Shown piece after piece: positions 13,505 through 32,614 of a DNA stretch of 64,000 nucleotides. The stretch spans positions 124,001 through 188,000 of IMG/VR virus record IMGVR_UViG_3300002143_000235; one strand, given 5' to 3'. The notes under the pieces are model-generated. The model was not told the DNA's origin, searched no databases, and worked only from the letters and a program-made list of their open reading frames with translations. The translations under genes were made by a program, and so were the position numbers. Positions within the stretch are counted from its first letter, which is position 1. Each line of letters opens with the position of its first letter.

Positions 13505-14131
13505 ATGACATTTGGATTAGTAGAAATAATGACTGGTATAGGTGGATTTCTTACTATTTACATTATTAATAATGCACGTCTTAAAGAAGGTATTACTGAT
13601 TGGGTTTTAGGTGTATTTGGACGAAATACATACGATATAACTGATCATAATGTTCGTGAACAGCTTAAAGCACTCAAATTTGATTCAATACTTAATGAAT
13701 TTGATAATAAGATTAAGACTGATCTTTATCATTATTATGTTGAAACAGTTTTAAATACTATGCATGATCTTGTAAGTGATATATTAGATAATCAAAAGAA
13801 AATGAATTTTTCGGCACTTAAGGCACATGTTAAAAATAATATGTACGATAGATTATCTAGTATAGATATAGAAATTGATAAACATGTTTCTATGCCTGAT
13901 CAATTACAAGAAAAATTTGACAAGTTTAGAAACTATTTGACAAAACAACATACGTATTCGATTGATAATGCTCTACATGCATCAAATAAAAAGTTACTTC
14001 TTGTTCAAGTTTTAGATGCTATTGAAAATAATAGTCGTTGGTTTCTTTTTTACACTACTGAGATGATGGAAAATTTTAACGGTCACTTTGATGCTTTATC
14101 ACGTAGTGATGTTTTCATTAAACAAAATTAA
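13505..14131 (+). CDS. Hypothetical protein with N-terminal TM segment
   Basis: GATATATAA motif upstream at 13471. Confidence 0.7.
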   Translation: MTFGLVEIMTGIGGFLTIYIINNARLKEGITDWVLGVFGRNTYDITDHNVREQLKALKFDSILNEFDNKIKTDLYHYYVETVLNTMHDLVSDILDNQKKMNFSALKAHVKNNMYDRLSSIDIEIDKHVSMPDQLQEKFDKFRNYLTKQHTYSIDNALHASNKKLLLVQVLDAIENNSRWFLFYTTEMMENFNGHFDALSRSDVFIKQN

Positions 14132-14151
14132 TTCTTTGCGTTATAATACGC

Positions 14152-14655
14152 ATGATACCTACGTACAAAGAAATTAGATTATTAGCAAATAATATTCAGC
14201 AACAAGCACATACACTTGCTACATTACGCGGTGTAAAATTCGCGCGTGCTTTGAGTATAAATATTGCAGTTATAGGACGTATTATTGATTTTCTTGATAA
14301 TCTTAAAAGACCACTACCAGAATATATTGAATACAATAATCAAAGAATAGCAATATGTAAACTATTTTGTAAACGCTCCAATGATGGTGTGTTACAACAT
14401 CTTGTTGTTGAAGGTAAAAATTTATTTGATGTGGATATTGATGATCCAGTATTTATAAAAGAAATGAATGATTTATACTCTAAATACGGTGAAGATATTC
14501 ATCGTCAAAAAAATCAAGATAGTATTTATAATATGGTAGTTAATAATGAAATAGGTCAAGAATGGATTGATCAATTTGTTAAGATAAAAGAGGAATGGAT
14601 TGATGAAAATATTACAGTTCAACAGATGGAACTGATAATGTATTTTATAGAATGA
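14152..14655 (+). CDS. Hypothetical protein
   Basis: AAAC-N18-TATA at 14120-14145. Confidence 0.7.
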   Translation: MIPTYKEIRLLANNIQQQAHTLATLRGVKFARALSINIAVIGRIIDFLDNLKRPLPEYIEYNNQRIAICKLFCKRSNDGVLQHLVVEGKNLFDVDIDDPVFIKEMNDLYSKYGEDIHRQKNQDSIYNMVVNNEIGQEWIDQFVKIKEEWIDENITVQQMELIMYFIE

Positions 14656-15043: not shown

Positions 15044-15424
15044 ATGAATAACAAATATTGGTGGACGCCTGAAGAAAAGGGGCTTACACCAGAACAGATT
15101 GATATAAAAGTTGAAGAACTCTGGCAAAAAAGTCTTGCTGAAGTTACACATTGTTGTCCAGATTGTATTGTTAGTCCCGGTGAAGCTCATGAATTTCTGT
15201 GTGACGTTGCAAGATGTATGTCATGTAAAGGACAAGCATTAAGTTGTGGTTGTGAAGATATTGGTGAAGATATTTGGACTGGTTTATGGCCAGGAATTAA
15301 AGAGTGTTACGAATTAAAACTTATTTGTTGGTCTGATCCAAATCGTATTGGTGGAACAGATTGGACTTTTGATTTGAATACACTTGCTGAAATAAATGCT
15401 AGAAAGAAATGGACAAAAGATTAG
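15044..15424 (+). CDS. Cys-rich hypothetical protein
   Basis: CPDC...H...CDVARCMSC.GQ.LSCGC. Host-type promoter at 15032. Confidence 0.7.
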   Translation: MNNKYWWTPEEKGLTPEQIDIKVEELWQKSLAEVTHCCPDCIVSPGEAHEFLCDVARCMSCKGQALSCGCEDIGEDIWTGLWPGIKECYELKLICWSDPNRIGGTDWTFDLNTLAEINARKKWTKD

Positions 15425-15951
15425 AACGAGTATCACGACATATGTCTAAATTACTTAGACATGATAGTGAAGGCCTTGTAATGGATAATGAAGGTTGGAT
15501 ACAGTGTAGTGATTTATGTAAGCATACAAACATTACATTAACAGAACTTCGTGATATTGTATCATCAAATGATAAGAAACGATTTGCATTTGATAAGTAT
15601 GAACAACGAATTCGTGCATCACAAGGTCACTCGAAAGGTATGAATATTGATATTACAATGCCATGTATAACACTAGTTCAACAAGATTTTCCAATATATC
15701 ATGGCACATCTATGTCTATTGCACAGAAAATTATAGGAACATCAATCCTACCAGGTGAACATATTTATGTACACTGAACAAAAAATCTTACTTTGGCATG
15801 GAAACGTGCTAGACAGCGTGATCGCGACAATCCAGCTCTGGTTGTTCTTGATGTAAAAAAATACCTAGCTGACGGAAATGTACTTTATATTTCTGAAAAT
15901 GAAGTGTATCATACAGGAGAAGTAGATGGAAAATATTTACGTATTGAATAA
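15409..15951 (+). pseudogene. kptA: Tpt1/KptA RNA 2'-phosphotransferase interrupted by in-frame TGA (15775-15777)
   Basis: SKLLRHD, DKKRF, IRASQGHS, IYHGT and YVH*. The same frame continues ...VLYISENEVYHTGEVDGKYL to TAA at 15951. Confidence 0.85.
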
Positions 15952-16020: not shown

Positions 16021-16758
16021 ATGACTGAAGTATTTATAACATCTTCGACATCCTACCGCATTGTAAAAAACGGTATTGAAATTTTTGAAACAAAAAACGC
16101 TCTTGCATCAATGAATGATGTATTAAATACACTTGGTTTAAATGCAGACGAAGTTTCAATTTTTTCAGGAGATGGTAATTTTGCACAAGAACATTCAATT
16201 ACGGGTATTGGTGCCTATCGTGAAATTTTAACAAATTACGATGCAAACGAAGACGAAACTCAAAGTGTTGACGAAATCATTGCTGAGATGAACGGCGGAA
16301 TGAAAGCACGTAATGCTGATCGTTATCGTCACATTGTAACACAAGAAACACCTACAGTTGAAGACGAAGAAGAAACGGTAACAGATAAACAATCTGAATC
16401 AAATCAACACGTACCAGTGGGAGCTGTTGAACGTCCAGAAATTGGTAATCTTATTTACATTGATGGAATGAAGAGTATTCTTCGTACAATTCTTGGTGGT
16501 GTTGCGACAGTATCTGCAGTTCATGATACAAATACTTATGTTCCAAACGGTGAATCGGATTCTTATATTGACGATCAATACGATGAAGAAGACTATAATG
16601 GTAATTACAGCGGTGAAGAAGATATTGAAACCACTGAGGCTAATATTATGGTTGAGATTGAAGAGTTCCCCGGAATATACTTCTCTTGGTCAATGTTACG
16701 TGCACGTCAAGAAGAACTTGCAGCACAGTACGGTTACAAACCAGCACAACAATTGTAA
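16021..16758 (+). CDS. Acidic hypothetical early protein
   Basis: TTTGCA and TATATTTG promoter elements upstream, terminator at about 16771-16803. Confidence 0.75.
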   Translation: MTEVFITSSTSYRIVKNGIEIFETKNALASMNDVLNTLGLNADEVSIFSGDGNFAQEHSITGIGAYREILTNYDANEDETQSVDEIIAEMNGGMKARNADRYRHIVTQETPTVEDEEETVTDKQSESNQHVPVGAVERPEIGNLIYIDGMKSILRTILGGVATVSAVHDTNTYVPNGESDSYIDDQYDEEDYNGNYSGEEDIETTEANIMVEIEEFPGIYFSWSMLRARQEELAAQYGYKPAQQL

Positions 16759-16863
16759 TTATTGATAAAATAAAAAAAACGTTTCAAATTGAAACGTTTT
16801 TTTATTTCGTAATTATTAAACAACTATCATTTTGTGATTTATAATAAAGAAAATAAATTACGT

Positions 16864-17493
16864 ATGGTTTCAGCTCTTACTTCGACTGCAAGACGTCGAA
16901 AGCTACCGCAAGGTTTCACACCGATGATTGTTGAAGAAACAGATTTAAATGCAAATAGCATTTCTGTTTTTGATAAGTTGATGCAGGAACGTATCATATT
17001 TTTAGGTGTAGAAATAGATGATTACATCGCAAATACGATTAATGCTCAATTATTATATTTAAATTCTGAAAGTGCTGATGAACCTATTTGGATGTATATC
17101 AACTCACCGGGCGGAAGTGTTTATTCTGGTCTAGCAATCTATGATACAATGAATATGATTGACGCACCAGTTTACACTTGTGTGATGGGATTAGCTGCTT
17201 CAATGGCATTTATTCTTGCTATTGCTGGTGAGAAGGGTCATAGATATGCTTTACCAAACAGTAAACTAATGTTGCACCAACCACTTGGTGGAATTGATTA
17301 CGCACAAGCTACTGATATTGCAATTCACAACGATGAAATTCAAGATCTTAAAAAAGATATAAACACAATAATTGCTGAACACACTGGTCAATCGATTGCC
17401 AAAGTGAAAAAACTTTCTGAGCGTGATACGTGGATGAAAGCTAGTGATGCATTAGCTTTCGGAGCAATTGATGTAGTGCGAACAAAAAAATAA
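16864..17493 (+). CDS. clpP: ATP-dependent Clp protease proteolytic subunit
   Basis: ERIIFLG, YINSPGG, AASMA (Ser), MLHQP (His) and ERDTWM (Asp). AAAC-N18-TATA at 16818-16843. Confidence 0.95.
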   Translation: MVSALTSTARRRKLPQGFTPMIVEETDLNANSISVFDKLMQERIIFLGVEIDDYIANTINAQLLYLNSESADEPIWMYINSPGGSVYSGLAIYDTMNMIDAPVYTCVMGLAASMAFILAIAGEKGHRYALPNSKLMLHQPLGGIDYAQATDIAIHNDEIQDLKKDINTIIAEHTGQSIAKVKKLSERDTWMKASDALAFGAIDVVRTKK

Positions 17494-17570
17494 TGATACT
17501 GAAATTAAACAATCTTTTCAGATCACTATATAAATACTAACAAAGATACTTCTGATAATTATCAGAGGAT

Positions 17571-17580
17571 GTTCATTGAC
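17571..17580 (+). promoter_or_regulatory. boxA-like antitermination element
   Basis: GTTCATTGAC just before the tmRNA. An identical 10-mer lies at 26131 before the tRNA array. Confidence 0.55.
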
Positions 17581-17584
17581 TTCT

Positions 17585-17963
17585 GGGGGTGACCGATTTT
17601 GATTTGCATTTGATATGTAAATAAGCATGTGGTGATAGTATAATTTCACCTTAAAAAGAATACACAACAATAAACGCAAACACTAAAAATTCTGCAGCTT
17701 TCGCACAGATCGCAGCAGACCTTGGAGCAAATGCAGTTACGACTGTAAACGATACGGCTGATATCGTTGAATTTGCAGCCTAAGGTACTCCGAAAGGACT
17801 TAACACAGCACAAGAGGTTCTGACACGCCTGAACAAATGTGTCAACAAAGTTTTGTATGTCTTCACAAGACATTCTATTTGGTCCGCAAAGAAAAGTGGA
17901 ATAAACATGTAGAAGGTTTATCCTATTGCTGTAAAGATCGGGGTTTGATTCCCCGCACCTCCA
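17585..17963 (+). ncRNA. ssrA: tmRNA
   Basis: 5' GGGGGTG pairs with 3' CACCTCC-A (G3:U70). T-arm CGGGG-TTTGATT-CCCCG and GCATG/CATGT helix. Tag ORF 17676-17783 starts GCA after ATAAAC and ends EFAA*. Confidence 0.93.
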
Positions 17964-17964
17964 C

Positions 17965-17996
17965 AAAAAAGGCTTCAAATTCTTGAAGCCTTTTTT
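17965..17996 (+). terminator. Terminator after tmRNA
   Basis: AAAAAAGGCTTCAA-ATTC-TTGAAGCCTTTTTT. Confidence 0.85.
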
Positions 17997-26215: not shown

Positions 26216-26301
26216 GGGCCGATGGTGGAATTGGTAGACACGTCGCGTTTAAGCCGCGATGCTCCGTAAGGGGCGTGTGGGTTCGACTCCCACTTGGCCT
26301 A
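26216..26301 (+). tRNA. tRNA-Leu(TAA)
   Basis: Cloverleaf with TCGCG-TT TAA GC-CGCGA and a long variable arm. No encoded CCA. Confidence 0.95.
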
Positions 26302-26420
26302 CACAAACACTAAACACCAATTACTGAAACAGAGTGTACAATCTGTGTAAAGAAATGTCGATAAAAAACAATACTGTGGTGCTTGGTATTGGAGACGGCG
26401 AAATTAAAGCGCTAAGATAT

Positions 26421-26501
26421 TGTGAGTGAGAGAAGCTGGTCACTTGTTGTTCGTATGGGTTCAGAAACCAAAGATCATCGGTTCGAATCCGACACTCACT
26501 A
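26421..26501 (+). tRNA. Atypical tRNA, anticodon CAG (Leu?), possibly degenerate
   Basis: Acceptor TGTGAGT/ACTCACT with a 1:72 mismatch, expanded D region, weak stem ATGGG-TT CAG AA-ACCAA, short variable loop and a good T-arm. Confidence 0.55.
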
Positions 26502-26578
26502 CTAATTGAACGCTGTAAAGCAAACTGAAGTTCTGTGAATCAATTCATTTTAGAATTGAAAGAGTTAATAAGTAAATT

Positions 26579-26662
26579 GGCCGTGTGGTGGAATTGGTAG
26601 ACACGCCATCTTGAGGGGGTGGTGCTCGTAAGAGCGTGTGGGTTCGAATCCCACCATGGTCA
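26579..26662 (+). tRNA. tRNA-Leu(GAG)
   Basis: CCATC-TT GAG GG-GGTGG with a long variable arm. Confidence 0.95.
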
Positions 26663-26737
26663 CTTCTGAGGATTTAGTATTTAACGTAGAGCTGGATCAA
26701 CGGTAAAATAACAAGTTGGATGAGAAGACAACAATTT

Positions 26738-26811
26738 AGTCGTATAGCTCAGTTGGTTAGAGCACCACACTGATAATGTGGGGGTCGCAAGTTCAAGTCT
26801 TGCTATGACTA
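26738..26811 (+). tRNA. tRNA-Ile(GAT)
   Basis: CCACA-CT GAT AA-TGTGG. Confidence 0.95.
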
Positions 26812-26813
26812 CG

Positions 26814-27023
26814 AAATACCTGCTGAAGACGATCAGTAATGGATAAAGGGTGGAGCTGTTATATGATAAGCCATCTCGAATGGAGATGTGTAACGGAAGA
26901 CCACGACACTATAGTTTTAACCAGCAAAACGTTGGTCGTTGTAGGAAAAGAGACTGATTAAAAGCAAACTCACCGACCGGGAGATGAAAACAACTCTTGA
27001 TTCGCTGGAATGGACAGGTATTT
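26814..27023 (+). ncRNA. Unclassified structured RNA (about 210 nt)
   Basis: Closing helix AAATACCTG/CAGGTATTT, internal GATCAGT/ACTGATT and CATCTC/GAGATG stems. GC-richer than the genome and not in the ORF track. Confidence 0.55.
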
Positions 27024-27028
27024 TATTT

Positions 27029-27100
27029 AGGCGCGTAGTAGAACGGTTATCACGCATGACTGATAATCATGTAATGGGAGTTCGATTCTCCCCGTGCCTA
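27029..27100 (+). tRNA. tRNA-Ile(GAT), second divergent copy
   Basis: CATGA-CT GAT AA-TCATG. Confidence 0.9.
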
Positions 27101-27219
27101 CACTAAAGATGGTTGACCACATAATAGCATTGTGTTAAAAATTGGGATAAGATGTCACCCAGTAGGAAGGAAAGTCTAGCAACGAAACCTGCTTAGTATT
27201 TGAAACGTAAATACAAACT

Positions 27220-27269
27220 GCTCGTGTGGTGGAATTGGTAGACACACAAAATACTTGTGTGTCTACCAA
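27220..27269 (+). pseudogene. 5' fragment of a Leu-type tRNA with 15-bp inverted duplication
   Basis: GCTCGTG-TGGTGGAATTGGTAGACAC then a perfect inverted repeat TTGGTAGACACACAA/TTGTGTGTCTACCAA (27235-27269). Confidence 0.7.
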
Positions 27270-27298
27270 ACTTCTTAAAAAACATATGTATATTATAC

Positions 27299-27754
27299 AT
27301 GTGGAGCAGGAATTATATTACAGATGAACAAATAATAGAAGCAGTTAAATTATCTAAAACAATGAGCGAAGCTGCAGCTATTGTTAAATTAAAATTTGAA
27401 ACATTTAAACGTAGAGCACAACATTTAGATATTTATAAACCAAATCAATATCGGAAAGGAATTAAACGTTCTGAAAGTGAATTTGAAAAACAAACAATAC
27501 CACTTGAAGAAATATTGAATGGAAAACACCCATCTTATAATACATCAAGATTACGAAAACGATTAATTAAAGCAGGATTAAAAGAAAATAAATGTGAAGA
27601 AAAAGATTGTACTGTTTCAGATTGGAAAGGTAAATCATTAACATGTGAACTTCATCATATTGATGGTGATAGAACAAATCACAAGTTAAATAATTTACAA
27701 ATAATTTGTCCAAATTGTCATAGCCAAACTGATAGTTTTGCACGAAGAAAATAA
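27299..27754 (+). mobile_element. Free-standing HNH homing endonuclease in tRNA array
   Basis: ELHHIDGDRTNHKLNNLQIICPNCHSQT with an N-terminal HTH-like region. Confidence 0.85.
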
Positions 27755-27757
27755 TAT

Positions 27758-27831
27758 AGCTACATAGCCCAATTGGAAGAGGCAATAGATTTAGAATCTA
27801 TATAGTGTGGGTTCGAGTCCCACTGTGGCTA
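27758..27831 (+). tRNA. tRNA-Leu(TAG) with short variable loop
   Basis: ATAGA-TT TAG AA-TCTAT with a 5-nt variable region. Confidence 0.85.
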
Positions 27832-27835
27832 CAAC

Positions 27836-27918
27836 GGCAGGTGAGATGTATTATTCTCTGAAAAGTTAGACTGCAACAGACTGTTGAGAAGCAGTGGCAT
27901 TGTTGGTGTTAGCCCAAC
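27836..27918 (+). ncRNA. tRNA-like structured element (T-arm-like hairpin)
   Basis: GATGT/GCATT helix enclosing an ACTGTT-GAGA-AGCAGT hairpin, then GTTGG-TGTTAGC-CCAAC. Confidence 0.4.
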
Positions 27919-27969
27919 TAGGGAAAAGTCCCCGAATGAGAGTTCCTTTCACGCTGGTGGTAAACGTGT

Positions 27970-28054
27970 TTTATGTAAAAGCGATCAGTTTGACTGAGTA
28001 TAAAAACGTCTAGCACAGTTGAAAGATAAGACGTTCTAATTGTTTTTACATAAA
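27970..28054 (+). ncRNA. Unclassified stem-closed RNA (about 85 nt)
   Basis: 16-bp closing helix TTTATGTAAAAGCGAT/ATTGTTTTTACATAAA, with internal TCAGT/ACTGA and AACGTCT/AGACGTT. Confidence 0.5.
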
Positions 28055-28059
28055 TAAAT

Positions 28060-28136
28060 GCTTCGTTATACCCTCATGCTTATACCATGTAGAAAGGTTA
28101 GTCTGGTTCACGTTGGTTCAAATCCAACACGAAGTA
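28060..28136 (+). ncRNA. tRNA-like RNA with rearranged arms, TAT anticodon-like loop
   Basis: Acceptor GCTTCGT/ACGAAGT-A and canonical T-arm. The CATG-CT TAT AC-CATG hairpin precedes a D-loop-like AGTCTGGT. Confidence 0.6.
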
Positions 28137-28146
28137 CAAGCATAAA

Positions 28147-28171
28147 GATGGTTCGACTCCATCCAGGCCTA
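28147..28171 (+). pseudogene. Orphan tRNA 3' fragment (T-arm plus acceptor strand)
   Basis: GATGG-TTCGACT-CCATC-CAGGCCT-A with no matching 5' half nearby. Confidence 0.6.
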
Positions 28172-28188
28172 CAAATAAAGAATTGAAA

Positions 28189-28326
28189 ATGAATAAGAAA
28201 TTGATACAACGAATTGAAGAAATCTTCGAACAAAAGTTACAATCGAAGACAGGTTGGGGTCGCAACGAGATCCTGGCACTTCACAAAGAAGCAGTTAATG
28301 AAGCTCTTTTAGAGTTAATTGACTAA
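28189..28326 (+). CDS. Small hypothetical protein (45 aa)
   Basis: MNKKLIQRIEEIFEQKLQSKTGWGRNEIL... with an A-rich leader. Confidence 0.65.
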   Translation: MNKKLIQRIEEIFEQKLQSKTGWGRNEILALHKEAVNEALLELID

Positions 28327-28330
28327 AAAT

Positions 28331-28402
28331 GCTGGAATAGTATAATGGTTATTATATCTGTTTTGTAATCAGGTGATCACAGTTCGATCCTGTGTTCCAG
28401 CT
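28331..28402 (+). tRNA. tRNA-Thr(TGT)
   Basis: GCTGGAA/TTCCAGC acceptor and TT TGT AA loop. Confidence 0.9.
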
Positions 28403-28528
28403 CTGATATGCCACGTAAGCCTCTACAAGTATGCTCAAACCGCGGACGTTAGGTAATCTGTCTGAGGTACCAGAGGACAGATTGAAAAGATACGGAGTTG
28501 TGAATCTCGAGGGCTAAAATCACAAACT

Positions 28529-28600
28529 GCCGGAATGGTCGAGCGATTAGGCGTCTCCCTGCAAAGGAGAATCACGGGGGTTTGAATCCCTCTTCCGGCT
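28529..28600 (+). tRNA. tRNA-Cys(GCA)
   Basis: TCTCC-CT GCA AA-GGAGA with U73. Confidence 0.92.
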
Positions 28601-28615
28601 CAATAAATTTAAAAT

Positions 28616-28765
28616 ATGTCAATATTATCAATCATTCTCATCTGTTTAGGTGTTTACGCTGTAATCGGATTAATTGTAGGACTTGTTACAAAGAGTGTTG
28701 CAAACGGTTTTCTCTGGGGTGTTGAATTGATTGGTGAGTTATTTGAAAATATTGATTTCGATTAA
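28616..28765 (+). CDS. Small membrane protein (49 aa)
   Basis: MSILSIILICLGVYAVIGLIVGLV... hydrophobic. Confidence 0.6.
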   Translation: MSILSIILICLGVYAVIGLIVGLVTKSVANGFLWGVELIGELFENIDFD

Positions 28766-28769
28766 AAAT

Positions 28770-28841
28770 GTTGGTGTGTCCGAATAGTTATGGTACTGGT
28801 CTGCAAAACCAGTTAAGTAGGCGCAAGTCCTACCACCAACT
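28770..28841 (+). tRNA. tRNA-Cys(GCA), second copy with atypical T-loop
   Basis: CTGGT-CT GCA AA-ACCAG, T-loop CGCAAGT, U73. Confidence 0.85.
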
Positions 28842-28855
28842 CAAATAAATTAAGA

Positions 28856-29023
28856 ATGGTACTTTACATTATTTTAGCAGCACTCATTTACATCATTATA
28901 AGCGTGATAGTTTATTTCATTATGCAAAATGAAGAATCTGATAAGAAATGGTTATGGACAATCTTTTGGCCGATTGCACTTGGATTTGAGCTTTTAGCAA
29001 ATAGTATGTGGTTTTTCTTCTGA
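28856..29023 (+). CDS. Small membrane protein (55 aa)
   Basis: MVLYIILAALIYIIISVIVYF...IFWPIAL. TGATG coupling to the next gene. Confidence 0.6.
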   Translation: MVLYIILAALIYIIISVIVYFIMQNEESDKKWLWTIFWPIALGFELLANSMWFFF

Positions 29024-29433
29024 TGAGATACATTTTTACAGATATTGATGGAGTTCTTCAGATAAAGAATCCTAAAAAGTGGGATAAGAAGTGTTGTGCT
29101 TTGTATAATAAGCTTTGTAACGAGCTTGATTTGAAAGCTGTTATAACTTCTACTTGGAGAGTACGATACAGTGTTAGAGAGCTTCAAAACATCTTTTATG
29201 ATCAAGGTATTGATGTAGAAATTGTTGGTGTAACTGATGTATTAGGAATTGATCGTGGTGAAGAAATCTTGAACTACATTCGAGATAACAGTGTAAGTGA
29301 ATATGTTGTGATCGATGATAATGTTAGAGACATAATACCATTTGTAAATAATGTTGTAGGTATCGATAAATCATATATTGGACTTACAGAAGAAAATTGT
29401 AAAGAAATTAAAAAAATATTTAGTAATGATTGA
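29023..29433 (+). CDS. HAD domain of Swiss-Army-Knife RNA-repair type (HAD_SAK_2-like)
   Basis: IFTDIDGVL, VITSTWR, RGEEI and YVVIDD. Confidence 0.8.
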   Translation: MRYIFTDIDGVLQIKNPKKWDKKCCALYNKLCNELDLKAVITSTWRVRYSVRELQNIFYDQGIDVEIVGVTDVLGIDRGEEILNYIRDNSVSEYVVIDDNVRDIIPFVNNVVGIDKSYIGLTEENCKEIKKIFSND

Positions 29434-29635
29434 ACATAATGGAAAAATTTATGTCGAAGTACGTAGAATCAAGAAGTCAACATTTGAGACAGGTCTTGAA
29501 GGTGTAAAAAAATATATGGAGCACATTAAGGCTGAACATGTATTACAAGATGCTGAGTATTTCATCTTTGTTAATTTTGTTGATGATGTAGAATTTGAAA
29601 TGGTTGAAGAACCAGTTGTCGATGAGACAGCATAA
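29426..29635 (+). CDS. Hypothetical protein
   Basis: Coupled ORF starting MIEHNGK. Confidence 0.65.
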   Translation: MIEHNGKIYVEVRRIKKSTFETGLEGVKKYMEHIKAEHVLQDAEYFIFVNFVDDVEFEMVEEPVVDETA

Positions 29636-29644
29636 AATAAATAT

Positions 29645-29715
29645 GGCAATATAGTTCAAGGGTAGAACGGTGGAATCATAACCCACTAATTTCAGTTCGA
29701 GTCTGAATATTGCTA
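29645..29715 (+). tRNA. tRNA with CAT anticodon (Met or Ile2)
   Basis: GGCAATA/TATTGCT-A and GTGGA-AT CAT AA-CCCAC. Confidence 0.88.
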
Positions 29716-29797
29716 CTTTGACTTTTTAGTGAAACAGATTTCATATAACTGGTCTAAAGGAAGAAAAAATTAAATTAAAATTAATACCTGTGTATCA

Positions 29798-31455: not shown

Positions 31456-31489
31456 TGTTTAATTGAAATATTATACCTATATTTACAGT

Positions 31490-32614
31490 ATGAAAATTCT
31501 ATCAAAAGAACAAGCATCGACAAAATTGAAAGGTATTTTACCTGTAGACATTCAGATTCTAGCAAACGCATTTCAGCTTGCTAGTTTTGATTTGTTCTTG
31601 GTTGGTGGTTGTATACGTGATGCATTTATGGACAAAGCACCAAAAGATTTCGATGTTTGTACAAATGCAATGCCTGAGCAAGTAATGGAAATTCTTAAAG
31701 CAAATGCAATTAACTTCCAACTTCAAGGTGAAGCATTTGGTGTTGTTGTTGCGAGAATGTCTGAGGATATAGAAATTGCCACATTTCGCACGGATATTTC
31801 AGGAGGAACTGGTAAAAATTCAGACGATAGTGTTGTATTAGGGGTTACTATTGAAGAAGACGTTGCACGACGTGATCTTACGATAAATGCACTCTTTATG
31901 AATTTGCAGACTGGTGAGATTATTGATCTTGTTGGTGGTATTGATGATTTAAATAATGGTATCGTTCGAACTGTTGGACATCCATCTGAACGTTTTGCAG
32001 AAGACAATCTTCGTAAATTACGTGCTGTTGTTAGAACTGTTAAAACAAATTTTCAATTTGAAGAAAATACTTTTAATTCTATTAAAAATGATCCATCTCT
32101 AAATGTGTCAAAAGAAAGAATCATTATAGAATTATTTAAAATAGATTTCAATTTTGATATTTTACATGATTTATTATTTTCAAGTAATTTAATTTTTGAA
32201 ATTTTACCTGATCTTGATATTACTAATGATACAAATAAACCGATTATATCATTGGATTCAATGTTTGCTATTATTCTTCAAAATGAAAATCTAAAGAATT
32301 TAAATAATAAATTAAACAATTTAAATTTTCCTTGCACATTATCTAATAATATTTGTTTTTTAATTAAATCTATGAAAACTGATTTAACTGAAATTAATCC
32401 CTTTCACTTTTCAAAGGATCGCAAAAAAACAAAATTAACAGTTGATGAATTAATTTTATTTTTTGATAATGATCAAAACATTATTGAATTAATAAATTTT
32501 AAAATAAAACCAGAATTGTCTCAAGAATTAATGGATCAAGGTTTTAAAGGAAAAGATTTAGGTTTGGCTATTGAATTATTTTGTTTTGAGAATCGCACAA
32601 ATATTTTGAAATAA
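31490..32614 (+). CDS. cca: Class II tRNA nucleotidyltransferase (CCA-adding enzyme)
   Basis: LVGGCIRD, KDFDVCT, EIATFR, EDVARRDLTINAL and RFAEDNLRKLRA. Confidence 0.88.
   Translation: MKILSKEQASTKLKGILPVDIQILANAFQLASFDLFLVGGCIRDAFMDKAPKDFDVCTNAMPEQVMEILKANAINFQLQGEAFGVVVARMSEDIEIATFRTDISGGTGKNSDDSVVLGVTIEEDVARRDLTINALFMNLQTGEIIDLVGGIDDLNNGIVRTVGHPSERFAEDNLRKLRAVVRTVKTNFQFEENTFNSIKNDPSLNVSKERIIIELFKIDFNFDILHDLLFSSNLIFEILPDLDITNDTNKPIISLDSMFAIILQNENLKNLNNKLNNLNFPCTLSNNICFLIKSMKTDLTEINPFHFSKDRKKTKLTVDELILFFDNDQNIIELINFKIKPELSQELMDQGFKGKDLGLAIELFCFENRTNILK

What the first reader, a model, noticed from the sequence alone, without database searches (positions are those of the whole stretch)
16864..17996. 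ClpP next to a phage tmRNA with an unusually long 35-residue tag
The tag frame 17676-17783 reads ANTKNSAAFAQIAADLGANAVTTVNDTADIVEFAA*, roughly three times the usual tag of about 10 aa. It keeps an AA C-terminus of the ClpX-degron type. It lies directly behind an intact clpP, and both have the same promoter class. Inference: this is a phage-run ribosome-rescue and proteolysis module, and the extra tag segment may carry an adaptor-binding or routing signal.
Basis: partly seen in the sequence, partly recalled or inferred. Interest (0 to 1): 0.6.

Follow-up and report, generated by a model that had tools for sequence, protein, structure and literature searches.

The report
Phage ClpP–tmRNA module, long tag
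A huge phage of about 314 kb carries its own ribosome-rescue RNA (tmRNA), which writes an unusually long 35-residue tag, placed directly behind its own ClpP protease gene; this pairing recurs in many uncultured huge phages, which suggests they run their own rescue-and-degrade pathway.

Summary
Rfam calls a full-length tmRNA at 17585-17966 (87 bits, threshold 47). ARAGORN misses it. The resume codon GCA at 17676 sits in the canonical register. The frame runs 35 codons to a TAA inside helix 5.

The window lies in a 313.7-kb IMG/VR virus record. Upstream, at 16864-17493, is a true ClpP with an intact Ser-His-Asp triad. The genome also encodes SmpB and a CCA-adding enzyme, but no Clp unfoldase.

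Four diverged relatives (ClpP 62-69% identical, or only partly read) keep clpP followed by tmRNA on the same strand. Their tags are 35-39 residues, with a conserved N-proximal block maintained through synonymous codon changes. A second, larger phage clade has the same layout with a 25-residue tag, and two of its large genomes, the only ones searched, add a ClpC-type unfoldase.

On viral contigs, tmRNAs with short tags lack clpP. None of 120 bacterial loci has clpP directly upstream on the same strand, and bacterial tags are mostly 9-10 residues.

Metatranscriptome contigs lie only on the tmRNA.

Best reading: a phage-run trans-translation and proteolysis module. Tagging, degradation and any adaptor role are inferred. 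The "AA" C-terminus is not conserved. Novelty: a new variant of a known kind.

The parts
16773..16803 (.). Palindromic terminator-like hairpin that closes the upstream gene and separates it from clpP
   Evidence: Terminator scan, (14-pair stem flanked by A and T runs).
16816..16846 (+). Promoter-like element before clpP: TTAAACAA, 15 nt, then a TATAAT-like box
   Evidence: Sigma-70-type scan gives 10 of 12 matches. The extended motif occurs only 3 times in the genome against 0.2 expected. Function is inferred.
16864..17493 (+). clpP, 209 aa, proteolytic subunit with an intact Ser-His-Asp triad
   Evidence: PF00574 at 233 bits. NF001368 at 251.8 bits, cut-off 249. PDB 6hwm at E 1e-55, with the catalytic motifs aligned. 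Differences in a roughly 91% identical river-metagenome relative fall almost entirely on third codon positions counted from this ATG.
17505..17535 (+). Second copy of the same promoter-like element, 50 nt before the tmRNA 5' end
   Evidence: No sigma-70 match at the scan's threshold was reported at this site. Function is inferred.
17549..17568 (+). Hairpin in the presumed 5' leader of the tmRNA precursor, which RNase P would remove
   Evidence: Processing is inferred.
17585..17966 (+). One-piece tmRNA gene. The discriminator A is at 17963 and CCA is not encoded (the sequence reads CAA)
   Evidence: Rfam at 87.1 bits. The acceptor stem has G3:U70 in 5 of 5 relatives, and the T-arm, long helix 2 and helix 5 all show compensatory changes.
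17631..17650 (+). Pseudoknot 1, first stem (GGUGA ... UCACC)
   Evidence: Both stem sides change together across the five sequences of alignment A3 (read by eye). The second PK1 stem was not tested formally.
17676..17783 (+). Tag reading frame: 35 codons plus TAA. With the Ala carried by the tmRNA, 36 residues would be appended
   Evidence: The frame and its length are conserved in relatives, with synonymous codon replacements at conserved residues.
17781..17802 (+). Helix 5: the stop codon lies in the outer stem, and the inner stem is capped by a GAAA tetraloop
   Evidence: RNAalifold pairs 223-234 show compensatory changes. The outer stem was read from the sequence.
17965..17996 (+). Intrinsic terminator directly after the tmRNA
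   Evidence: Fold energy -16.9 kcal/mol, z -6.8, followed by a U run.
15409..15777 (+). Tpt1/KptA RNA 2'-phosphotransferase homologue, kept upstream of clpP in all relatives with flank available (window copy is only 122 aa)
   Evidence: PF01885 at 86 bits. tblastn finds it in L009, L010, L012 and L200.
26216..29716 (+). Array of 9 tRNA genes, part of the same translation-support region
   Evidence: ARAGORN and Rfam.
31463..32614 (+). ORF with a PolyA_pol head domain, the candidate CCA-adding enzyme that a tmRNA without encoded CCA needs
   Evidence: PF01743 at 120 bits at G000:C1:155592-155969. ORF limits.

Best explanation
This is a phage-encoded trans-translation and proteolysis module. The tmRNA is transcribed from its own promoter-like element, and possibly also by read-through from clpP, and ends at the terminator at 17965-17996. 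Its 5' leader would be removed by host RNase P. CCA would be added by the phage nucleotidyltransferase and the RNA charged with Ala by the host AlaRS. The phage SmpB (G000:C1:47184-47645, outside the window) would deliver it to ribosomes stalled on broken or stop-less mRNAs. Such stalls should be frequent during infection, when host mRNA is being degraded or RNA-cleaving defences fire. Translation resumes at GCA 17676 and appends 36 residues. The tag has three parts: a conserved N-proximal amphipathic block (AN-x-KN, then hydrophobic residues at about positions 9, 12 and 16, ending in L-G or L-A); a variable spacer rich in Ser, Thr, Ala, Val and Glu; and a small or non-polar C-terminus. The tagged products would be unfolded by a Clp ATPase and degraded in the co-expressed phage ClpP. 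In this clade the ATPase must come from the host. In two large genomes of the sister clade it is a phage ClpC-type enzyme. The outcome is freed ribosomes and recycled amino acids. Shown here: the gene identities, the RNA architecture, the conserved synteny, protein-level conservation of the tag, and enrichment of the tmRNA in RNA libraries. Inferred: tagging, degradation, which unfoldase acts, and any adaptor role for the conserved block.
For: The tmRNA matches Rfam over its full length, and its structure is supported by covariation, including an invariant G3:U70. SmpB scores 129.5 bits on TIGR00086 (cut-off 119.1) and has a basic C-terminal tail. ClpP is intact. A CCA-adding enzyme is present. 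clpP followed by tmRNA on the same strand, 57-99 nt apart, is found in L009, L010/L011, L012 and L200. L228 has a ClpP C-terminus just upstream of its tmRNA. Their tags are 35-39 codons long. Conserved residues are encoded differently in different lineages: Ser as TCT, AGC or AGT; Leu as CTT or TTA; Gly as GGA or GGT; Asn as AAT or AAC. A strain variant, TTT to TTC, is silent. A second clade of 22 distinct tmRNAs has clpP 84-513 nt upstream (a few at 900-1850 nt) and a conserved 25-residue tag. The two large genomes of that clade that were searched (G004, G005) also have SmpB and a two-domain Clp ATPase; G004's, at 840 aa, carries an xGF ClpP-docking loop. Among distinct viral-contig tmRNAs with at least 1 kb of upstream sequence, 27 of 27 with clpP have long tags, while 13 of 15 without clpP have short tags. 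In 120 bacterial loci sharing the same 3' motif, none has clpP upstream on the same strand, and 93 of 103 ARAGORN-called tags are 9-10 aa. In two metatranscriptome runs and one probable RNA run, all four near-identical contigs (151-188 nt) lie inside the tmRNA and none on clpP, whereas the DNA run covers both.
Against: No unfoldase is encoded in this genome or in the complete relative G001, so the link between tag and ClpP depends on an unknown host partner. The C-terminus is not a conserved LAA-type ClpX degron. Conserved adjacency could reflect co-regulation rather than a substrate-protease relationship. The lineages are few (two or three clades), so the 2x2 association is inflated by shared ancestry. 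The RNA-library evidence comes from assembled contigs, and the tool itself warns that DNA carry-over is possible. The host is not identified. ARAGORN does not recognise the gene.
Confidence: 0.6

Rival explanations
1. The tmRNA and SmpB work only to release stalled ribosomes. The long tag is a tolerated extension with no signalling role, and clpP sits beside the tmRNA merely because both are early, co-regulated auxiliary genes.
For: From established knowledge, ribosome release rather than tagging is the essential activity of trans-translation in most bacteria tested. The distal two-thirds of the tag is poorly conserved in sequence. One open 35-codon frame is expected by chance about 10% of the time. 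Both genes carry the same promoter-like motif.
Against: Tag length (35-39 codons), the N-proximal block and a non-polar C-terminus are all kept across lineages whose ClpPs are only 62-69% identical, and multi-nucleotide synonymous replacements occur at conserved residues. The association of long tags with clpP recurs in a second clade with an unrelated tag sequence.
Confidence: 0.2
2. The long tag directs products to a protease other than ClpP, such as Lon, FtsH or a periplasmic tail-specific protease, as in Mollicutes where long tags are read by Lon. The phage ClpP would then serve another purpose.
For: The only long bacterial tags in the control set are Mollicutes-like, at 22 and 25 aa. Their Lon dependence is from my own knowledge (Gur and Sauer 2008). 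This clade has no phage unfoldase. The C-termini ELV and ATA are not classical ClpX motifs.
Against: clpP lies directly upstream in all 27 distinct tmRNAs that have clpP anywhere in the flank, and all 27 have long tags. Only two long-tag tmRNAs with at least 1 kb of upstream flank lack it. The sister clade adds a ClpC-type ATPase with a ClpP-docking loop. No Lon search was made, so this rival is not excluded.
Confidence: 0.12
3. The gene is a passenger: a host ssrA copy, or an attachment-site remnant picked up by imprecise excision, with no role for the phage.
For: ssrA is a frequent prophage integration site, and viral contigs do carry host-type tmRNAs with short tags.
Against: The gene is full length and has its own promoter-like element and terminator. 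It is conserved with compensatory changes in phage genomes of 123-391 kb, one of them complete with terminal repeats, and is accompanied by phage SmpB. A clade-specific pattern finds nothing in 185,579 bacterial species genomes. The tag is unlike the 9-10 aa bacterial tags.
Confidence: 0.03

Closest known systems
Bacterial tmRNA-SmpB trans-translation with ClpXP degradation of ssrA-tagged proteins (E. coli, Caulobacter, B. subtilis)
   Same: One-piece tmRNA with G3:U70, PK1, a GCA resume codon, a stop codon in helix 5, and an SmpB partner. The tag has a non-polar C-terminus, and ClpP is present.
   Different: The element is encoded by a phage. The tag is 35 residues rather than about 10-15. 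The stretch from the stop codon to helix 2 is about 119 nt, against about 175 nt in E. coli (my own knowledge), so the pseudoknot ring is probably reduced. clpP rather than smpB is the neighbouring gene. No clpX is encoded. CCA is not encoded.
Mollicutes tmRNAs with 22-27-residue tags read by Lon
   Same: The tag is long. Two such bacterial tags (22 and 25 aa) turned up in the control set.
   Different: Those organisms lack ClpXP and use Lon (my own knowledge), whereas here the element brings its own ClpP. The tag sequences are unrelated and the C-termini differ.
Known phage tmRNAs: Bacillus phage G, mycobacteriophages of the Bxz1 group, and Melnitz and the pelagimyophages
   Same: A phage-encoded tmRNA. 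Phage G also encodes ClpP and ClpX (PMC12484599). About 2.3% of phage genomes carry a tmRNA detectable by ARAGORN (PMC9004378).
   Different: The phage G tag is 13 aa, and its tmRNA lies between genes other than clpP and clpX (PMC12484599). Melnitz has a two-piece tmRNA under a riboswitch. None of these papers describes clpP-ssrA adjacency or tags of 25-39 aa.
Huge phages carrying translation genes, including tmRNA and SmpB (Al-Shayeb et al. 2020, PMC7162821)
   Same: A huge phage (over 300 kb) from environmental metagenomes with tRNAs, tmRNA and SmpB.
   Different: That survey assigned tmRNAs with ARAGORN, which misses every member of this clade. The published huge phages with the closest ClpPs (46-54% identical, including the Lak phages) have no tmRNA within 2.5 kb of clpP.

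Membership tests
tmRNA (Rfam RF00023, one-piece) | Covariance-model score above the curated gathering score over the full model | tested here: met
   87.1 bits against 47, model positions 1-374.
tmRNA (Rfam RF00023, one-piece) | tRNA-like domain: 7-bp acceptor stem with the G3:U70 alanine identity pair, and a T-arm | tested here: met
   G:U at acceptor-stem position 3 in 5 of 5 sequences. Other acceptor and T-stem pairs show compensatory changes.
tmRNA (Rfam RF00023, one-piece) | Internal reading frame that starts at a resume codon downstream of PK1 and ends at a stop in helix 5 | tested here: met
   GCA at tmRNA nt 92, aligned to the consensus resume site. It is the only frame conserved in all relatives. 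The helix 5 GAAA hairpin covaries.
tmRNA (Rfam RF00023, one-piece) | Ring of pseudoknots PK2-PK4 between helix 5 and helix 2 | tested here: inconclusive
   This region aligns poorly to Rfam (low posterior probabilities). It is only about 119 nt long, and its fold is no better than shuffles (z -0.7).
tmRNA (Rfam RF00023, one-piece) | A 3' CCA end available for aminoacylation | tested here: inconclusive
   CCA is not encoded; the gene reads A-CAA after the acceptor stem. A PolyA_pol-family nucleotidyltransferase is encoded at window 31463-32614.
tmRNA (Rfam RF00023, one-piece) | SmpB partner present | tested here: met
   A 153-aa SmpB at G000:C1:47184-47645, TIGR00086 at 129.5 bits against a cut-off of 119.1. 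SmpB is also present in 4 of 5 related records.
tmRNA (Rfam RF00023, one-piece) | Alanylation and tagging of stalled nascent chains | not testable with these tools
   Requires biochemistry or mass spectrometry.
ClpP (peptidase family S14) | Ser-His-Asp catalytic triad within a full-length ClpP fold | tested here: met
   The query aligns along its length with solved ClpPs, and the Ser, His and Asp motifs are present. PF00574 profile positions 5-181 of 182 are matched.
ClpP (peptidase family S14) | Curated family score thresholds | tested here: inconclusive
   It passes the subfamily model NF001368 (251.8 against 249) but not the equivalog TIGR00493 (217.7 against 308.6). It scores far above the phage head-maturation ClpP-like model, whose cut-off it fails (90.9 against 120).
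ClpP (peptidase family S14) | A cognate AAA+ unfoldase (ClpX, ClpA or ClpC) with a docking loop | tested here: not met
   None in this genome and none in the complete relative G001. It is present only in the sister-clade genomes searched (G004, G005; docking loop read in G004). A host partner is assumed.
ClpX-type ssrA degron | Conserved C-terminal L-A-A or x-A-A carboxylate | tested here: inconclusive
   FAA here and MAA in L010, but ELV in L012 and ATA in L200 and L228.
Adaptor-binding tag segment (SspB type) | A tag segment bound by an adaptor that tethers substrates to the unfoldase | not testable with these tools
   Only a conserved N-proximal block is seen. No SspB search was made and no candidate adaptor was identified.
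Mollicutes-type long Lon tag | A long tag in a lineage that lacks ClpXP | tested here: not met
   The element itself supplies ClpP, and the tag sequence is unrelated to the Mollicutes-like tags in the control set.

The most novel reading that the evidence does not exclude
Huge phages run a private degradation code. Their long-tag tmRNAs mark the products of ribosomes stalled during infection with a tag that differs from the host's 9-10 residue tag. That tag is read preferentially by the phage's own ClpP machine, either with a phage ClpC (as in two sister-clade genomes) or by recruiting a host unfoldase through the conserved tag block. This would be a natural counterpart of the orthogonal tag-protease pairs used in synthetic biology.
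Probability: 0.25. Interest if true: 0.8.

Novelty: new variant of a known kind. Interest (0 to 1): 0.6.

Why it matters
Phage tmRNAs have been treated as occasional translation accessories and are usually counted with ARAGORN. This result shows a recurrent, ordered clpP-ssrA unit in two diverged huge-phage clades, each with a clade-specific tag 2.5 to 4 times the usual length, plus SmpB and, in two genomes of one clade, a ClpC-type unfoldase. It gives a concrete, testable case of a virus bringing both the marking step and the destroying step of protein quality control. It suggests that ARAGORN-based surveys under-count phage tmRNAs. It also offers natural long degrons and matching proteases that could be used as orthogonal degradation tools.

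Tried and rejected
- ARAGORN on the window and on excised candidates: no call for any member of this clade, and wrong or missing calls for many long-tag tmRNAs. I take this as a limit of the tool, because Rfam and covariation agree on the gene.
- First viral pattern, built around the resume site: 120 AT-rich chance hits and no new member. It was replaced by a helix 2 plus T-loop pattern.
- The genome search 'relatives' is not available for a virus record.
- blastn of the whole finding against 50,697 phage records: only weak hits on the clpP part and none on the tmRNA.
- Published huge phages and Lak phages with the closest ClpPs: no tmRNA within 2.5 kb.
- ClpX (TIGR00382) and AAA_2 searches of the genome: nothing. 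The two PF00004 hits over the cut-off are a clamp loader and a 389-aa classical AAA protein with no evident pore loop or docking loop. I did not adopt it as the unfoldase.
- ORF 16021-16758, directly upstream of clpP, as a possible adaptor: no Pfam or PHROG hit; absent from L012; AlphaFold model unusable at mean pLDDT 41. No fold search was made.
- The one bacterial locus with clpP near ssrA (L324, a Flavobacteriales MAG): clpP is about 2.2 kb downstream on the opposite strand, and the tag is probably the usual 10 aa.
- Complex prediction was not run. No specific protein pair is claimed to bind, and this clade has no unfoldase to test.
- Host identification was indirect only (see the full report).
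Full report
**1. What is there**

The window is bases 124001-188000 of a single-contig IMG/VR virus record of 313,708 bp. The record is linear, CheckV estimates it at about 80% complete, and its GC content is 32%.

Rfam's tmRNA model matches 17585-17966 on the + strand over its full length, at 87.1 bits against a gathering score of 47. It is the only match above threshold in the genome. ARAGORN reports nine tRNAs at 26216-29716 but no tmRNA, even when given only the local region.

GCA at 17676 opens a 35-codon frame that ends at TAA 17781-17783. The Rfam alignment puts this GCA on the consensus resume codon with high posterior probability.

The 5' strand GGGGGUG pairs with CACCUCC at 17956-17962, giving G3:U70. 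The discriminator A is at 17963, and the gene continues CAA, so CCA is not encoded. A strong terminator hairpin with a U run follows at 17965-17996 (-16.9 kcal/mol, z -6.8).

**2. The neighbouring gene**

ORF 16864-17493 is a true ClpP.
- Pfam PF00574 scores 233 bits.
- NCBIfam subfamily NF001368 scores 251.8 bits against a cut-off of 249. The score is far above the phage head-maturation ClpP-like model.
- It is about 50% identical to solved bacterial ClpPs, with the Ser, His and Asp motifs in place.
- In a river-metagenome relative about 91% identical over clpP, nearly all differences in clpP fall on third codon positions counted from this ATG. The frame is therefore under purifying selection.

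**3. Promoters**

TTAAACAA, 15 nt, then [AT]TATAA[AT] occurs three times in 313.7 kb, against 0.2 expected from shuffles. All three copies are on the + strand: at window 14118, at 16816 (18 nt before the clpP ATG) and at 17505 (50 nt before the tmRNA 5' end).

No terminator separates clpP from the tmRNA, so both read-through and independent initiation are possible. Promoter function is inferred.

**4. The rest of the pathway in the genome**

- SmpB: 153 aa at G000:C1:47184-47645 on the minus strand, outside the window. TIGR00086 scores 129.5 bits against a cut-off of 119.1, and the basic C-terminal tail is present.
- CCA-adding enzyme: a PolyA_pol-family nucleotidyltransferase lies just past the tRNA array, at window 31463-32614.
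- Unfoldase: none found. There is no ClpX and no AAA_2-type Clp ATPase. The two PF00004 proteins over the cut-off are a clamp loader and a 389-aa AAA protein of unknown role.
- A second, divergent ClpP-like ORF lies at G000:C1:262263-262853. The complete relative G001 has only the tmRNA-linked ClpP.

**5. Relatives of this clade**

A ClpP-based scan of viral contigs, followed by pattern scans, found these relatives.

| Locus | ClpP identity to the window | Source |
|---|---|---|
| L009/L093 | near-identical | 169-kb contig |
| L010/L011 | 69% | two contigs, 14 and 30 kb |
| L012 | 62% | 391-kb genome, complete, with terminal repeats |
| L200 | 65% | 123-kb contig |
| L228 | only the C-terminus is in the locus | activated-sludge contig, 40 kb |

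In L009, L010/L011, L012 and L200, clpP is followed on the same strand by a tmRNA after 57-99 nt. In L228 the C-terminus of ClpP lies just upstream of the tmRNA. A Tpt1 homologue lies upstream in L009, L010, L012 and L200.

RNAalifold on five sequences supports the acceptor stem, the T-arm, the long helix 2 and the helix 5 GAAA hairpin. Compensatory changes occur at 37 of 69 predicted pairs. The first PK1 stem also covaries, read by eye.

The stretch between the stop codon and the 3' strand of helix 2 is only about 119 nt. It aligns poorly to Rfam and folds no better than shuffled sequence. The long reading frame therefore seems to come with a reduced pseudoknot ring.

**6. The tag is conserved as a peptide**

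From the aligned resume codon, only the GCA frame is open in every lineage, for 35, 35, 36, 38 and 39 codons. The other two frames close after 2-23 codons, at inconsistent places.

The tags share three features:
- a common start, AN-x-KN;
- hydrophobic residues at about positions 9, 12 and 16, ending in L-G or L-A;
- a variable spacer rich in Ser, Thr, Ala, Val and Glu, followed by a small or non-polar end (FAA, MAA, ELV, ATA, ATA).

Conserved residues use different codons in different lineages: Ser as TCT, AGC or AGT; Leu as CTT or TTA; Gly as GGA or GGT; Asn as AAT or AAC. One strain variant in the sequencing runs, TTT to TTC at 17774, is silent. This is what translation under selection looks like. 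The classical "AA" ending, however, is not a family trait.

**7. A wider pattern**

A scan of viral contigs for a helix 2 plus T-loop motif returned 77 loci with 55 distinct full-length tmRNAs. Rfam confirmed all eleven that I submitted.

A second clade of 22 distinct sequences has clpP (35-41% identical to this one) upstream on the same strand. The gap is usually 84-513 nt. These tmRNAs carry a conserved 25-residue tag that contains SENF[LF] and ends in GE[LV]A-x-A or close variants.

I searched two large genomes of that clade (368 kb, complete, and 306 kb). Both also encode SmpB and a two-domain Clp ATPase. The one I examined, G004's, is 840 aa with a Clp_N domain, a short middle domain and an M-G-F loop after sensor 1. 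That is where ClpC carries its ClpP-docking loop and where ClpB has none; the comparison is from my own knowledge.

Among distinct viral tmRNAs with at least 1 kb of upstream sequence in the locus:

| | Long tag | Short tag (9-15 aa) |
|---|---|---|
| clpP upstream | 27 | 0 |
| no clpP upstream | 2 (L163, L172) | 13 |

These counts are not phylogenetically independent.

As a control, 120 bacterial loci with the same motif were examined; they are mostly Bacteroidota and Burkholderia.
- ARAGORN gave tags of 9 aa in 61 loci and 10 aa in 32, out of 103 calls.
- The only long tags were two Mollicutes-like ones, of 22 and 25 aa.
- No locus had clpP upstream on the same strand.
- A clade-specific pattern found nothing in the bacterial species collection.

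**8. Expression**

Sequencing runs that hold parts of the stretch come from river, freshwater, wastewater and soil samples.

In two metatranscriptome runs and one probable RNA run, the four near-identical contigs (151-188 nt, 1-6 differences) all lie inside 17593-17955 and none lies on clpP. A fifth contig belongs to an L010-like tmRNA. The DNA run covers both clpP and the tmRNA.

This fits an abundant stable RNA. These are assembled contigs, however, and the tool warns that DNA can be present in RNA libraries.

**9. Host**

The host is not identified. The indirect signs below point to Bacteroidota, and this remains an inference.
- GC content is 32%.
- There is no Shine-Dalgarno enrichment before 240 long ORFs: 5% against a 4% background, with A-rich leaders.
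- The habitats are freshwater, wastewater, soil and activated sludge.
- The nearest phage ClpPs are in Lak (Prevotella) phages and in very large uncultured phages.

If the host is Bacteroidota, its own tag would be about 9 residues, and quite different from the phage tag.

**10. Interpretation**

The best reading is a phage-run trans-translation unit coupled to proteolysis. The phage supplies tmRNA, SmpB, CCA addition and ClpP. The host supplies RNase P, AlaRS, EF-Tu and, in this clade, the unfoldase.

The architecture, the synteny and the peptide-level conservation are shown here. Tagging, degradation and any adaptor role for the conserved block are inferred. The rivals are rescue without signalling, targeting to another protease, and a passenger gene; they are weighed in their own sections of this report.

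**11. Compared with the literature**

Phage tmRNAs, huge phages with tmRNA and SmpB, and phage G with a 13-aa tag plus ClpP and ClpX elsewhere in its genome are all on record (PMC4131195, PMC7162821, PMC9004378, PMC12484599). The commonest tag length is 10 aa (PMC11915505).

My five literature searches found no description of a clpP-ssrA unit or of 25-39 residue phage tags. The library does not cover all journals, so the novelty claim is limited to that extent. I rate the finding as a new variant of a known kind.

Noticed in passing
window 26216-29716 and 31463-32614: An array of nine tRNA genes (Leu x3, Ile x2, Thr, Cys x2, Met) is followed by a 383-aa ORF with a PolyA_pol head domain, a likely CCA-adding enzyme. 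Together with Tpt1, ClpP and the tmRNA this forms a translation and RNA-maintenance region.
   Followed up: partly
window 15044-15951: The Tpt1/KptA homologue is only 122 aa here (15409-15777) and matches profile positions 2-124 of 177. In relatives it is 184-189 aa. Small ORFs flank it at 15044-15424 and 15793-15951, so the gene may be split or truncated in this genome and in L009.
   Followed up: partly
L009:4104-5950: In the near-identical relative, the sequence diverges from the window exactly at the tmRNA 3' end. About 1.8 kb is present there that the window lacks. It holds three ORFs (one with a SHOCT domain) and two matches to the DUF805b RNA motif (RF02914). This may be an insertion at the tmRNA 3' end, which is a classical integration site.
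   Followed up: partly
L170:621-689: An HDV-like ribozyme (RF02682, 46 bits against a threshold of 44) starts directly after the 3' end of a phage tmRNA (249-621). It may process the tmRNA 3' end.
   Followed up: no
G000:C1:262263-262853 (L211:1315-1905): A second, divergent ClpP-like ORF (196 aa, PF00574 at 76 bits, Ser and His motifs present) sits between a DUF5662 gene and a dual-specificity phosphatase-like gene. It is absent from the complete relative G001.
   Followed up: partly
G000:C1:242949-244118 (L206:847-2016): A 389-aa classical AAA protein has Walker A and B motifs and an arginine-finger motif, with an N-terminal half of about 200 aa that matches nothing. No pore loop or ClpP-docking loop is evident. 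Its role is unknown.
   Followed up: partly
whole genome G000: There is no Shine-Dalgarno signal upstream of 240 long ORFs (5% against a 4% background), and the leaders are A-rich. This suggests a host that does not use Shine-Dalgarno initiation, such as Bacteroidota.
   Followed up: partly
L226:192-2714 (minus strand; G004): A sister-clade phage genome of 368 kb encodes an 840-aa ClpC-type Hsp100 with an M-G-F loop at the ClpP-docking position, in addition to ClpP, tmRNA and SmpB.
   Followed up: partly
L163:8959-9352 and L172:11544-11985: Two other viral tmRNAs (Rfam 81 and 99 bits) have long tag frames, about 33-43 and 34 codons, but no clpP in the upstream flank that was available. Long tags may therefore be wider among phages than the clpP-linked clades.
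   Followed up: no
window 14118-14655: The third copy of the promoter-like motif lies just before ORF 14152-14655 (167 aa, no family match). This gene is probably co-regulated with clpP and the tmRNA.
   Followed up: no
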